The notes below the pieces were generated by a model, which worked only from the letters and a program-made list of their open reading frames with translations, was not told the DNA's origin and did not search any database. The position numbers and the translations under genes are program-made. Positions 58,789-61,900 of a stretch of DNA of 64,000 nucleotides are shown piece after piece. The number at the start of each line of letters is the position of its first letter. Position 1 is the first letter of the stretch. Source of the DNA: Haplodiscus bocki (lineage: Eukaryota); assembly GCA_965655095.1 (NCBI GenBank), contig OZ296655.1, positions 39,494,001 through 39,558,000 on the forward strand, read 5' to 3'.

Positions 58789-58859
58789 CCCCCATATTCC
58801 CAATACGTCTTCGCCGTATGGGGGAGAGCTCCACCACCGATGGGGCTACGAAAAGGGAA
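58789..58859 (+). ncRNA. Putative HDV-like self-cleaving ribozyme at the exact 5' end of the LINE
   Basis: P1 CCCCCAU/AUGGGGG (7 bp), P3 ACG/CGU, L3 UCUUCGC, P1.1 CU/AG, P4 AGCUCCA/UGGGGCU, J4/2 ACGAA with catalytic-position C58849, P2 UUCCC/GGGAA. P1 begins at the first base after the TSD. Confidence 0.75.
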
Positions 58860-58943
58860 ATACATCGCCAACAAAAGATGCTCCACGCTCGACAAAGACG
58901 GCCGGGTTTTTTGGGAGACCGAGAGTCTGAGGCCCGTCACTCA

Positions 58944-58991
58944 CGGCTACTACTCCTAAGGGCCGGCGATATCGAAGAAAATCCTGGACCG
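58944..58991 (+). other. 2A/StopGo ribosomal-skipping peptide
   Basis: RLLLLRAGDIEENPG|P is a perfect D(V/I)ExNPGP motif with a Leu-rich helix. Confidence 0.9.
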
Positions 58992-61900
58992 AACCACTGT
59001 GGATGGTGCAAGGACCTGGTCAAGGAGGCCAACTACCTCTCCTGCAAGAACTGCGAGACAAAATTCCACATGAAGCGGTTTTGCAGCGGACTCTCAAGAA
59101 ACGACGCAAGGACAACAGCGAGAGACAACACCCTGCTGTTTCATGTGCGCCCGGAGGGAGTGGCTGGAATGCGCCCTTTGTAGCAGCAAGTTCCACAGCT
59201 CGCAGAAGGGAAATAAATGTTGCGATTGCGGTAACAGCTACCACTACAAGTGCGCCAAGGTCCTCAGATCACAACAAGGCTCAAAAGACTGGAAATGCCC
59301 CCCATGCAAAGGAGAGCACCTCAGCCAACCCCAGCAACCTGGAGCAGGCAACATGTGCCGCCTGCGCAGGGATCATCAAGAGGGGTCACAACAGGAACAA
59401 ATGCGCAGCCTGCAGCAACGAAGGACACATCAAGTGCAGCGGTGGAAGGAGACAAGACTGGCTCAGCCGAATGTGCGACACGAGCCAACCACAGCAACCA
59501 CCTCGCCTACGGCAGAACCAAGACACACTCCCCACAAGCAAATGTAAGAAATGTGCAGGCAGAATCAACAAGGGAGCGCCGAGGGCAACGTGTCGACAGT
59601 GCACCAAACATTTCCACTACAAGTGCACAAGCAGCACACGAAGCGGCCAAGAACATGCGCACAAGGAAGACTGGAACTGTGATGCCTGCAAGGCTGCCAA
59701 GAATCCCACCACAATACCGGACATCGAAAGAGACCATCAAGACGCATAAGGCACAGAATCAGCTAAGATACTGCAGTGGAACTGCAACGGCCTCCATGGT
59801 AAGGCCAGCGAACTCGAACACTTCATGCTGAAGAACAAAATCGACATCGCGTGCCTCCAGGAAACCAAACTGACCCCATCCGACAAACCCATCACCTTTG
59901 CTGGATTCACAGCGGTCAGTAAACCGAGAACCAGAGAAGGAGTGTCTAGAGGGGGAGGAGTGATGACACTGATCAGAGAAGGCATCCACTTCCAAGACGC
60001 CCCATGCGCGCACCCCGACCGACACAGCGGAATGGAGGGGGTCTCGAGCAAAGTGACAACAGCCGAAAACCCACTGACAATCAGCAACCTCTCTACCCGC
60101 CAGCCTCATCATCTTCGGTCAGTTCATACTCGTCTGCTAATGCGCTAAGCATTATACCCAACGAGAATGAGCTCGTGCTAGGAGATCTGAACGCGCACCA
60201 CGAACTGTGGGACAGTCGACTAACAGACGACGGAGGGAACAGCCTGGCGGATTCCATATTGGTCAACAGCGCCGCAGTGCTAAATAACGGTGATGGCACA
60301 AGGCGCAGCCCTGCCACAGGGACTGAGACAAGCCCCGATGTGACAATCTGTCACAGGTCGCTCGCTGACAAGGCAACCTGGGAGGTAATCGAAGAGCTGA
60401 ACTCAGACCACCACCCAATCATCACCACCGTCTACAGCACGGTTGAATGTAGGGAGAAAGGCTCAAAGAGAGCGGTGTGGGATCTAAAGAGAGGAGACTG
60501 GGACGCATTCCGGAAAGCAGTTGAAGAAGCCATCTCGAACCTCCCCCGAGACAACCCACTACGCATGGAGAAAGCTCTAAGAACCTGCATCTGCAAAGCG
60601 GCATATGAACACATCGGCCTCAAGAAGGTCAGCAACAAGACCCCGATAAGGATTACCACAGAAATCGAGGAAGCTATTAAACAACGAGATGAAGCAAAGC
60701 AGAACCGACACAACGATGAATCACGATACAAGGAGGCAGACGAGAAGGTCAAAGATCTGATCACTGAGAAAAAGAAGAAAATCTGGAAACGGAAAGTACT
60801 GGACATCCAAGAAGCAGGAAACGTCTGGCAAATGGTCAGGAATCTCAAGGATGGCCCCAGAGAATGTAAACACAAAGCCATCATACATAATAATAAGACC
60901 CGTGTCACAGACCGCCAGAAGGCCCGGGCATTCATGAGCCATTATAAGAAGACGAGCAACATCACGCTCAAGAAGGAAGACAGATGGGCAAAGAAAGCGG
61001 TGAACGAACACCTGCGGAAACCAATATGCGACACAGAGCTTGAGAGAGAGTTCACCCTCAAGGAACTTAAATCAGCCCTCTCGAGTGTCGACGGAAGGAA
61101 GGCAACAGGACCAGATAAGATCCACCCTAGGATGCTTAAGAAGCTTGGTCCCTCTGCTTTGGCATACCTGCTGGATCTGTTCAACAACGTGTGGAAGACC
61201 AGCCAGGTCCCACAGATGTGGAGAACAGCCGACATCAGGCCAATCCCGAAGAAAGGTAAAGACCTCAGAGACGTGGGATCATTCCGGCCAATTAGTCTCA
61301 CCTCCGTTGTGGGGAAACTAATGGAGAGGATGGTCTGCACCAGACTTCGACACTTCCTCGAATCGAATAACCTACTAAACCCTAACCAAGCGGGATTCAG
61401 GAGCAAACGCAGCACAGAGGACCAGCTCCTCTGCCTCTCCCAGACGGTGAGCGACGAGTTCCAGAAGAAACCCATGCACCGAACCGTACTCGCTCTAGTC
61501 GACTACCGCAGAGCGTTCGACACAGTATGGCGAGATGCGCTCCTGTGGAAAATGATCCAGAAAGGGATTGGCACCCGAATAATACGGTGGACCCAAAGCT
61601 GGCTAAGCAACCGGCTGGCGTATGTTACGTTCGGGAATGCCAACAGCCAGAAGCGAGTAATGAAACAAGGCGTCCCCCCAGGCTCAGTCATCAGTCCACT
61701 ACTCTTCATAATATATATAGACGACATCACAGATAATATCCCTCCAGAAGTGATGGTAAGCCTGTTCGCGGACGACGTGGCACTGTACTCCTCGAGCATA
61801 GACTAGCAACAGCGGAAGCCCGGATACAGGAAGCACTTAACGTTGTCGCACAGTGGAGCACCAAATGGAAACTCACCATTTCAGCTGGGAAGTGTGAAGC

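What the first reader, a model, noticed from the sequence alone, without database searches (positions are those of the whole stretch)
58818..59749. Ribozyme + 2A peptide + four tandem PHD fingers at the head of a single-ORF LINE
Seen: an in-frame ATG lies inside the ribozyme (58818, alternatively 58878), followed by a short leader ending in DIEENPG|P, then four C4HC3-like fingers (across frameshifts near 59135 and 59335) fused to APE through an in-frame premature TAA (59747). Known: 2A motifs occur upstream of APE in Ingi and other non-LTR clades, and PHD fingers read histone tails. Inference: an uncapped, self-cleaved RNA makes a polyprotein whose N-terminus is released by StopGo, and the PHD array may steer integration by chromatin state.
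Basis: partly seen in the sequence, partly recalled or inferred. Interest (0 to 1): 0.7.

Follow-up and report, generated by a model that had tools for sequence, protein, structure and literature searches.

The report
LINE head: ribozyme, 2A, four PHDs
This is the broken front end of a young jumping gene (a LINE) whose intact sister copies encode one long protein preceded by a self-cutting RNA, a ribosome-skipping 2A peptide and four PHD zinc fingers. Each part is known from other LINEs, but I found no description of all three together.

Summary
Window 58789-63482 is a decayed copy (97% identical to an intact one, nine deletions) of a young non-LTR retrotransposon with at least 31-40 copies in this 1.5 Gb animal genome.

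- **Single ORF.** Two natural copies carry one 1530-codon ORF: a 37-aa leader ending DIEENPG|P, four C4HC3 PHD fingers, then APE, RT, RNase H and a CCHC knuckle. The PHDs are therefore not a separate ORF1.
- **Copy-specific lesions.** The frameshifts near 59135 and 59329 and the TAA at 59747 are lesions of this copy or a minority of copies. ATG 58818 is in frame only here. The family start is ATG 58878.
- **Ribozyme.** An HDV-like fold (58789-58859) starts on the first base after the target-site duplication. Relatives at 33-35% protein identity keep it with compensatory changes.
- **Conserved head.** Those relatives also keep the 2A, and two of them keep all four PHDs.
- **Not tested.** Self-cleavage, StopGo and PHD ligands were not tested, and no RNA data exist.
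- **Precedents.** Ribozyme plus 2A occurs in L1Tc. 2A-PHD-APE occurs in Crack, CR1 and Rex1 LINEs.

I rate it a new variant of a known kind. First readers of this scan also noted 2A-PHD heads on Polinton integrases elsewhere in this genome, and I found one such integrase ORF.

The parts
58777..58788 (+). 5' target-site duplication ACAACACCTTCA
   Evidence: The same 12 nt follow the tail at 63483-63494.
58789..58859 (+). HDV-like ribozyme. P1 58789-95/58818-24; P2 58797-801/58855-59; P3 58805-07/58815-17; L3 58808-14; P1.1 58825-26 with 58809-10; P4 58827-32/58842-47; J4/2 58848-54 with candidate catalytic C58849. Predicted cut 58788|58789.
   Evidence: Hand fold plus descriptor scan. Helix table with relatives. 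On the three-sequence alignment all cells pair and 8 of 18 pairs have double changes. Covariance model gives 77.6 bits here. Full-length copies start here.
58818..58820 (+). ATG inside the P1 3' strand, in frame with the 2A in this copy only
   Evidence: A 5-nt deletion after 58874 puts it in frame. In the intact copy it is offset by 2 and opens a 48-codon uORF.
58878..58988 (+). Family-typical start codon and 37-codon leader ending ...DIEENPG
   Evidence: It is the first in-frame ATG of the 1530-codon ORF in intact copies. Most copies read MLHARQ....
58947..58991 (+). 2A/StopGo core LLLLRAGDIEENPGP, predicted skip between 58988 and 58989
   Evidence: G-D-x-E-x-N-P-G-P is invariant in five distant relatives. 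At least 21 of 28 copies keep DIEENPGP.
58998..59148 (+). PHD-like finger 1 (C4HC3 with H-x4-C), split by a 2-nt deletion after 59135
   Evidence: Pfam PHD and C1_1.
59170..59307 (+). PHD finger 2 (canonical C4HC3 spacing)
   Evidence: Best PDB sequence match is KDM5A PHD1, then TAF3 PHD.
59329..59330 (+). Site of an 8-nt deletion (frameshift) between fingers 2 and 3
   Evidence: Missing in 8 of 28 copies. Present in the intact copy.
59354..59476 (+). PHD finger 3. The seventh ligand Cys is Ser in this copy.
59543..59689 (+). PHD finger 4, the best-conserved finger
   Evidence: Pfam PHD residues 226-274 of the intact protein. All ligands and the Trp are invariant in relatives.
59728..59764 (+). 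Frame-shifted stretch between a 2-nt and a 1-nt deletion. It holds the TAA at 59747-59749.
   Evidence: Intact copies read straight through into APE.
59768..60424 (+). AP endonuclease domain (approximate limits, one more frameshift after 60092)
   Evidence: Pfam Exo_endo_phos and Exo_endo_phos_2. Deletion listed.
61243..62010 (+). Reverse transcriptase domain (approximate limits, broken after 61802)
   Evidence: Pfam RVT_1. Deletions listed.
62689..63028 (+). RNase H domain
   Evidence: Pfam RNase_H, 51.6 bits here and 68.4 bits in the intact copy.
63226..63337 (+). C-terminal CCHC zinc knuckle
   Evidence: Weak Pfam zf-RVT match, and the motif C-x2-C-x8-H-x4-C is visible in the translation.
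63442..63482 (+). Stop codon followed directly by a (CAA/TAA)n tail, with no 3' UTR to speak of
63483..63494 (+). 3' target-site duplication ACAACACCTTCA

Best explanation
SHOWN. Window 58789-63482 is a dead copy of a young, single-ORF, APE-type non-LTR retrotransposon with an RNase H domain and a (CAA)n tail. It belongs to the I superfamily and is probably Ingi-like. The finding covers its head.

- The first 71 nt have the sequence and nested double-pseudoknot architecture of an HDV-like ribozyme.
- This fold begins on the first base after the target-site duplication.
- In intact sister copies an AUG 89-94 nt from that end opens one 1530-codon ORF. Its order is a 37-aa 2A leader, four PHD-type C4HC3 fingers, APE, RT, RNase H and a CCHC knuckle.

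INFERRED.
- The element is transcribed from outside, by read-through from host genes or from upstream copies.
- The ribozyme cuts the transcript at element base 1, which defines the template that is copied back.
- Ribosomes start at the third AUG. At NPG|P they release the leader and continue, giving a PHD-APE-RT-RNase H protein that starts with proline.
- The fraction of ribosomes that stop there may hold protein output down, as Ryan's group proposed for single-ORF LINEs.
- The PHD array takes the place that ORF1 or N-terminal DNA-binding fingers hold in other LINEs. It most likely tethers the RNP to chromatin or to the target.
- Priming uses pairing between the (CAA)n tail and ACAAC-like target sequence.
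For: Family and single ORF:
- At least 40 DNA matches at 94-97% identity.
- 31 ribozyme-bearing 5' ends found with a covariance model.
- Two natural copies carry an uninterrupted 1530-codon ORF with PHD, APE, RT and RNase H by Pfam.

Ribozyme:
- All helices pair, including P1.1.
- Against two relatives, 100% of cells pair and 8 of 18 pairs show double compensatory changes. Slid controls pair 35-53% with at most 1 double change.
- L3 (TCYNCGY) and J4/2 (ACGA) are conserved.
- Rfam RF02682 gives sub-threshold 25-bit hits that start at the hand-derived coordinates in two relatives.
- My model finds a third relative at the hand-derived coordinates.
- Copies and their duplications place base 1 of the element at P1 base 1.

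2A:
- The motif is canonical, with the LLxxAGD upstream context.
- It is invariant across relatives.
- Active 2As at this position in LINEs are documented (PMC3708506, PMC5814959).

PHD:
- Pfam 39.7 bits.
- PDB sequence matches to KDM5A, TAF3 and BPTF PHDs.
- Foldseek matches to MOZ/DPF double PHDs, and to Pygo PHD at TM 0.72-0.78 normalised to the target.

Target preference:
- Duplications start ACA(A/T)C or CAC.
- An ACAAC-like motif lies within 16 nt upstream in 11 of 23 flanks, against 9% background.
Against: - No RNA evidence. No run on record as RNA holds the stretch, and the four runs laid behaved like genomic DNA.
- Rfam finds nothing in the window itself.
- The bare fold descriptor matches about 1.75 times per shuffled window. 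The fold alone is therefore not significant, and the case rests on position and comparison.
- P1 opens with C-G rather than the usual G-U.
- Two AUGs inside the ribozyme open out-of-frame uORFs (48 and 31 codons) ahead of the main start. These would hinder ordinary scanning.
- One 49%-identical relative has no in-frame AUG before its 2A.
- The structure model of the head is mediocre (mean pLDDT 63).
- Nothing here shows what the PHDs bind.
- The clade rests on architecture and one circumstantial link (PMC11203168), not on a tree.
Confidence: 0.75

Rival explanations
1. The four fingers are not histone readers. They bind nucleic acid instead. Either they bind the DNA target, as the N-terminal zinc fingers of R2 do, or they bind the element's own RNA and so replace the missing ORF1 protein.
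For: - The element has no ORF1.
- Insertions favour ACAAC-like sites.
- In relatives the element sits directly after (CAA/CAG)n arrays or another copy's tail. This hints at sequence-directed targeting.
- In the one residue-level alignment available (finger 2 against the TAF3 PHD), the Trp two residues before the zinc-ligand His is Ser. By my recollection that Trp is a cage residue for H3K4me3.
Against: - Every sequence and fold match is to protein-binding PHD fingers.
- Fingers 2-4 keep the W-x-C-x2-C signature.
- The target bias can be explained by pairing between tail and target alone.
Confidence: 0.35
2. The first 71 nt serve mainly as an internal promoter or as 5' UTR structure. The uniform 5' end would then reflect a transcription start rather than self-cleavage.
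For: - In L1Tc the same 77 nt act as both promoter and ribozyme (PMC5814959, PMC3383444).
- A fixed start site would also give uniform 5' ends.
- No cleavage or RNA data were obtained.
Against: - Compensatory changes preserve P1, P3, P1.1 and P4 while the sequence diverges. That points to selection on RNA structure.
- The J4/2 ACGA is conserved.
- Relatives lie head to tail behind another copy's tail, where read-through followed by cleavage makes sense.
Confidence: 0.12
3. The 2A motif is an inactive relic or has a role other than skipping, for example as a short targeting peptide. The protein would then keep its leader.
For: - Odon et al. found many LINE 2A-like sequences inactive when key residues were changed (PMC3708506).
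- N-terminal 2A-like sequences can double as signal sequences (PMC4981915).
- Activity was not tested here.
Against: - The motif is fully canonical, including the upstream LLxxAGD.
- It is invariant across lineages that share only about 30% identity in the head.
Confidence: 0.1

Closest known systems
L1Tc / ingi of trypanosomatids (Ingi clade)
   Same: Single ORF. An HDV-like ribozyme occupies the first ~77 nt. A 2A peptide sits at the N-terminus, in frame with APE-RT-RNase H (PMC5814959, PMC3185411, PMC4035085).
   Different: L1Tc has no PHD fingers, a poly(A) tail rather than (CAA)n, a C-terminal C2H2 chaperone domain and a protist host. Its Pr77 is also a proven promoter, which was not examined here.
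2A-PHD-APE single-ORF LINEs of Odon et al. 2013 (Crack-17_BF, CR1-1/17/26_BF, STR-24/25/34/35_SP)
   Same: A 2A within 40-80 aa of the N-terminus, then a PHD domain, then APE in one ORF, with no ORF1 (PMC3708506).
   Different: They belong to the Crack, CR1 and Rex1 clades. By my knowledge those lack RNase H. The paper mentions 'a PHD domain', not an array of four, and reports no ribozyme.
R2 and other LINEs with 5' HDV-like ribozymes (R2, RTE, Baggins)
   Same: A ribozyme at the exact 5' junction processes a co-transcript. R2 also has a single ORF with N-terminal zinc fingers (PMC3774820; Ruminski et al. 2011 as cited there).
   Different: R2 uses a restriction-like endonuclease, is rDNA-specific and has no 2A or PHD.
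Ingi-1_AC of Aplysia californica and the abundant gastropod Ingi elements
   Same: A metazoan Ingi-clade LINE with a highly active N-terminal 2A (PMC3708506). The only named relative of my element at moderate distance is from Batillaria attramentaria, a snail reported to be rich in Ingi (PMC11203168).
   Different: I could not obtain its sequence. Whether it has PHD fingers or a ribozyme is unknown to me.
PHD (with esterase) ORF1 proteins of CR1/L2 LINEs
   Same: PHD fingers upstream of APE in LINEs. Some subgroups have a single ORF with an N-terminal PHD, and a targeting role has been proposed (PMC4120745).
   Different: The PHD is usually in a separate ORF1 and is described as one domain. 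Those elements belong to the Jockey superfamily.

Membership tests
HDV-like self-cleaving ribozyme | Nested double pseudoknot with P1, P2, P3, P4 and P1.1 in the canonical order | tested here: met
   All five pairings form in the window and in three relatives. The strict descriptor matches only 58789-58859 in the window.
HDV-like self-cleaving ribozyme | Structure maintained by compensatory changes | tested here: met
   8 of 18 pairs have changes on both sides and 100% of cells pair, against 35-53% when partners are slid. P2 covaries as well. Only three or four lineages were available.
HDV-like self-cleaving ribozyme | Catalytic C in J4/2 and cleavage immediately 5' of P1 | tested here: inconclusive
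   A conserved ACGA with C58849 is present, and element copies start at P1 base 1. Cleavage itself cannot be tested with these tools.
HDV-like self-cleaving ribozyme | Match to a curated Rfam model | tested here: not met
   Nothing in the window at E up to 10. Relatives give only sub-threshold RF02682 hits, 25 bits against a gathering score of 44. These models cannot score pseudoknots.
2A / StopGo peptide | C-terminal motif G-D-(V/I)-E-x-N-P-G-P | tested here: met
   GDIEENPGP at 58965-58991. Invariant in relatives.
2A / StopGo peptide | Suitable upstream context of about 18-30 aa | tested here: inconclusive
   The LLLLRAG context resembles active viral 2As (my knowledge) and is conserved. No predictor or assay was run.
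2A / StopGo peptide | Peptide-bond skipping during translation | not testable with these tools
   Needs a reporter translation assay.
PHD finger | C4HC3 ligand pattern with PHD spacing and Trp before the last Cys pair | tested here: met
   Four units in the intact copy. Fingers 2-4 are canonical. Finger 1 has H-x4-C and no Trp.
PHD finger | Pfam PF00628 above the gathering score | tested here: met
   39.7 bits against 24 for the intact head, with two stretches. The window fragments reach 18 bits at best, in one of three pieces.
PHD finger | PHD fold | tested here: met
   Foldseek matches MOZ/MORF/DPF double PHDs at E 3e-4, and Pygo PHD at TM 0.72-0.78 normalised to the target with rmsd about 2 A. 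The model is of modest confidence.
PHD finger | Binding of histone tails | not testable with these tools
   No assay was possible. Cage residues were not examined systematically.
APE-type non-LTR retrotransposon, I superfamily (Ingi-like) | APE, RT and RNase H in that order, target-site duplications, 3' tail | tested here: met
   Pfam domains. Duplications of 9-12 bp and a (CAA)n tail.
APE-type non-LTR retrotransposon, I superfamily (Ingi-like) | Placement in the Ingi clade by RT phylogeny | not tested
   No named reference RT sequences could be obtained. The only support is shared architecture with L1Tc and a Batillaria relative (PMC11203168).

The most novel reading that the evidence does not exclude
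The 2A-plus-PHD head may be a portable N-terminal module that unrelated mobile elements in this genome have acquired. These are this LINE lineage and a DDE (rve) integrase element whose head is 43% identical over 54 aa. In promoter-less, co-transcribed elements the module would do two jobs. The 2A would detach the enzyme from whatever peptide is translated upstream, whichever start is used. One relative has no AUG before its 2A. The PHD would tether the enzyme to chromatin. The ribozyme-2A-PHD head would then be a general solution for expressing a transposon enzyme from someone else's transcript.
Probability: 0.15. Interest if true: 0.65.

Novelty: new variant of a known kind. Interest (0 to 1): 0.45.

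Why it matters
It extends an arrangement known from a trypanosome LINE (L1Tc: 5' HDV-like ribozyme plus N-terminal 2A) to an animal lineage. It also joins it to the 2A-PHD-APE layout described separately in other LINE clades.

The head is conserved at 33-35% identity in the enzymatic part, so it is a selected design and not an accident of one family.

Because natural intact copies exist, three questions become directly testable:
- How is a LINE without a promoter or ORF1 expressed?
- What does a 2A do when it sits at the very N-terminus?
- Do PHD arrays choose insertion sites?

A canonical 2A and a compact ribozyme from an invertebrate may also be of practical use as tools.

Tried and rejected
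- **Rfam on the window.** The scan found no ribozyme.
- **Descriptor alone.** The fold descriptor matches about 1.75 times per shuffled window, so I do not count it as evidence on its own.
- **ORF open back through the ribozyme.** I tested whether the main frame being open to the RNA 5' end, as in R2, is meaningful. It is open in all five lineages, but the other two frames are almost as free of stops. The signal is therefore not specific and I dropped the idea.
- **RNA evidence.** The run search returned four runs of unrecorded type and none on record as RNA. Laid on an intact copy they behaved like low-coverage genomic DNA, so they say nothing about RNA ends or expression.
- **Word search with the head.** Among long proteins it found nothing. 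With the head alone it found only fragments of the same family and of one relative.
- **Relatives without a ribozyme.** L037, L039 and L041 gave no convincing ribozyme. Their contigs may start inside the element.
- **L038.** It has P2, P4 and J4/2, but also an odd insertion and a 6-of-7 P1, so I left it out of the counts.
- **Alignment.** MAFFT misaligned the L036 and L040 ribozymes. The pair counts therefore use three sequences.
- **Other families.** The covariance model found no second ribozyme family in this genome. Only 150 of 384 candidates were scored.
- **Integrase element.** No ribozyme lies upstream of the 2A-PHD integrase ORF.
- **Organism and clade.** Exact look-ups gave no names.
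- **Consensus.** All comparisons use natural copies.
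Full report
**What is at the coordinates.**
- ATG 58818 and ATG 58878 are in one frame with LLLLRAGDIEENPGP (58947-58991).
- Four Cys/His-rich units follow in three different frames: 58998-59148, 59170-59307, 59354-59476 and 59543-59689.
- A TAA lies at 59747-59749, and the start of an AP endonuclease lies near 59768.
- Downstream are RT, RNase H and a CCHC knuckle.
- The stop codon is followed directly by a (CAA/TAA)n tail.
- The 12-nt string ACAACACCTTCA flanks both ends, at 58777-58788 and 63483-63494. 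The element therefore spans 58789-63482.

**The window copy is dead but the family is young.**
- A DNA search of the window's own 1.5 Gb genome gave 40 matches at 94-97% identity, which is a lower bound.
- Two natural copies carry an uninterrupted 1530-codon ORF (L031:237-4829 and L032:1032-5624).
- Against L031 the window copy is 97.2% identical and lacks nine short stretches.
- In a 28-copy alignment the 2-nt loss after 59135 is shared with one other copy. The 8-nt loss after 59329 is seen in 8 of 28 copies.
- The 2-nt loss after 59728 and the 1-nt loss after 59764 together shift the frame for 36 nt, and that stretch holds the TAA. Intact copies read from finger 4 straight into APE.
- A 5-nt loss after 58874 is what brings ATG 58818 into frame. 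In the intact copy that ATG is offset by 2 and opens a 48-codon uORF. A second ribozyme-internal ATG opens a 31-codon uORF. The first in-frame ATG is the equivalent of 58878.
- I built no consensus. All statements rest on natural copies.

**The protein.**
The intact ORF begins with a 37-aa leader ending DIEENPG, followed by Pro. Four units with C4HC3 spacing come next.
- Fingers 2-4 are canonical, including W-x-C-x2-C.
- Finger 1 has H-x4-C.

Pfam PHD scores 39.7 bits against a cut-off of 24 on the head. APE, RT and RNase H are clear. PDB sequence matches, though weak, are consistently PHD fingers: KDM5A PHD1 at E 1e-3, then TAF3, KDM5B, BPTF and Pygo.

An AlphaFold model of the head is modest (mean pLDDT 63, fingers 70-83). 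Foldseek places it on MOZ/MORF/DPF double PHD fingers, and on Pygo PHD with TM 0.72-0.78 normalised to the target. There is no ORF1, because the ORF starts 89-94 nt from the element's first base.

**The ribozyme.**
I derived the fold by hand before seeing that another first-stage note gives the same limits. The pairings are:
- P1 CCCCCAT/ATGGGGG
- P2 TTCCC/GGGAA
- P3 ACG/CGT
- L3 TCTTCGC
- P1.1 AG with CU of L3
- P4 AGCTCC/GGGGCT
- J4/2 ACGAAAA

Evidence from scans is mixed.
- Rfam finds nothing here.
- A strict descriptor of my own hits only 58789-58859 in the window.
- The same descriptor also hits about 1.75 times per shuffled window, so the fold alone proves nothing.

Position and comparison carry the case.
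- Full-length copies lose similarity exactly at P1 base 1.
- Target-site duplications of the window copy and of L031 end on the base before it.
- Contigs of four public runs branch into unrelated flanks at that base or the one before it.
- A covariance model finds 31 such 5' ends in the genome.

**Relatives.**
A word search with the enzymatic part returned unnamed proteins from marine and other metagenome assemblies.
- Five of them, at 33-35% identity, begin with D(V/I)ExNPGP followed by PHD-like fingers. Two of these have four fingers.
- In the alignment of heads the 2A residues and all ligands of finger 4 are invariant.

Upstream of three of these ORFs the same ribozyme fold appears with different helices, at L034:56-123, L035:1296-1360 and L036:118-198.
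- P1 is GCAGCAC/GTGCTGC or GCACCAC/GTGGTGT.
- P2 is GCCCCC/GGGGGC, GCCTC/GAGGC or GACAGAA/TTCTGTC.
- P3 is ACC/GGT or GCC/GGC.
- P1.1 is GG/CC or GC/GC.
- L3 keeps TCYNCGY (extended in L036), and J4/2 keeps ACGA.

On the three-sequence alignment all 54 cells pair and 8 of 18 pairs carry changes on both sides. With partners slid, 35-53% pair and at most one pair shows such a change. Rfam's RF02682 gives 25-bit sub-threshold hits that start at L034:56 and L035:1296. My model recovers L036:118-198.

A 49%-identical relative (L040) has the same head in one 1566-codon open frame. Its ribozyme-like leader has P1 at 6 of 7 pairs, and it has no in-frame AUG before the 2A.

**How it most likely works.**

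Shown: the architecture, its conservation, and the coincidence of the element's end with P1.

Inferred from the documented behaviour of R2, L1Tc and other LINE ribozymes (PMC3774820, PMC5814959) and of LINE 2As (PMC3708506, PMC3894237):
- The element is transcribed by read-through.
- The ribozyme frees an RNA that starts at element base 1.
- Translation begins at the third AUG by a route that must cope with a structured, uncapped leader and two uORFs.
- At NPG|P the leader is released and a protein starting with Pro continues.

Because the upstream product is only 37 aa, this is not polyprotein processing in the usual sense. Either attenuation of ORF2-type protein output (PMC3894237) or removal of a variable N-terminus would fit.

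The PHD array occupies the place of ORF1 or of R2's N-terminal fingers. Chromatin tethering has been proposed for LINE PHDs (PMC4120745), but binding of DNA or RNA is not excluded.

Duplications begin ACA(A/T)C or CAC. An ACAAC-like motif lies within 16 nt upstream of 11 of 23 copies, against 9% of control 16-mers. This fits priming by pairing with the (CAA)n tail. In relatives the element lies directly behind (CAA/CAG)n or behind another copy's tail. That arrangement would supply read-through transcripts.

**Comparison with what is known.**
- Ribozyme plus 2A in a single-ORF APE-RT-RNase H element is the L1Tc/ingi design (PMC5814959). L1Tc is the subject of the only paper in the searchable library that holds '2A-like', 'HDV-like ribozyme' and 'retrotransposon' together.
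- 2A, then PHD, then APE in one ORF was described for Crack, CR1 and sea-urchin STR elements (PMC3708506).
- Single-ORF LINEs with an N-terminal PHD are noted in PMC4120745.
- No paper found combines a PHD finger with a self-cleaving ribozyme in a LINE.
- The clade is probably Ingi. The architecture fits, and the one named relative is from a snail reported as Ingi-rich (PMC11203168). I could not run a reference phylogeny.

**Verdict.**
Function is untested. I rate it a new variant of a known kind and of moderate interest.

Noticed in passing
L048:1088-2380 (-) = G000:C4:79528087-79529379: A 430-aa ORF with a Pfam rve integrase core (32.7 bits, just above the cut-off) starts with a 2A-like RAGVEKNPGP, which lacks the Asp, and a Cys/His finger. 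Its head is 43% identical over 54 aa to the LINE head (E 1e-5 for the single comparison). First readers noted similar Polinton/Maverick integrases elsewhere in this genome. No ribozyme lies upstream of it.
   Followed up: partly
window 58777-58788 and 63483-63494; L031, L032; 23 copies among L001-L026: Target-site duplications of 9-12 bp begin ACA(A/T)C or CAC and merge into the (CAA)n tail. An ACAAC-like motif lies within 16 nt upstream of 11 of 23 copies, against 9% background. This suggests tail-target pairing or a site preference.
   Followed up: partly
L035:216-1360; L034:1-62; L036:1-124; L038:1-84: In the metagenomic relatives the ribozyme follows directly on a (CAA/CAG/CAGTAG)n array. 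In L035 that array is the tail of another copy, so the copies lie head to tail. Part of the P1 5' strand (GCAGCAC) looks like the repeat itself.
   Followed up: no
L040:158-4858: A relative 49% identical in the enzymatic part has the whole head in one open frame but no in-frame ATG upstream of its 2A. This recalls R2 elements without an obvious start codon. Only one copy was examined.
   Followed up: no
L031:143-236; L034:56-209; L035:1296-1500; L036:118-271; L038:78-247: The 5' leaders are poor in stop triplets in all three frames: 11 of 15 frame-regions have none, whereas shuffles give 11-33% per frame. The cause is unknown and may be compositional.
   Followed up: partly
5' junctions of L006, L010, L017, L018, L019: The run of C at the element's first bases varies from 5 to more than 10 between copies. 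Possible causes are untemplated additions, slippage at the RNA 5' end, or C-rich targets.
   Followed up: no
L036:137-157; L038:109-131: Two relatives carry an extra hairpin-forming insertion inside or next to L3 of the ribozyme fold. By my recollection that is an unusual place for an insertion in HDV-like ribozymes.
   Followed up: no
L031:228-1026: Contigs of all four public runs include a low-depth variant that skips 797 nt, from just before the start codon into finger 4. This is a copy or subfamily without the 2A-PHD head.
   Followed up: no
L032 (G000:C5:10617500-10623400, minus strand): One of the two copies with an intact ORF is 5'-truncated by 6 nt, with target-site duplication CACTGCTCA. 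It therefore lacks most of the P1 5' strand of the ribozyme.
   Followed up: yes
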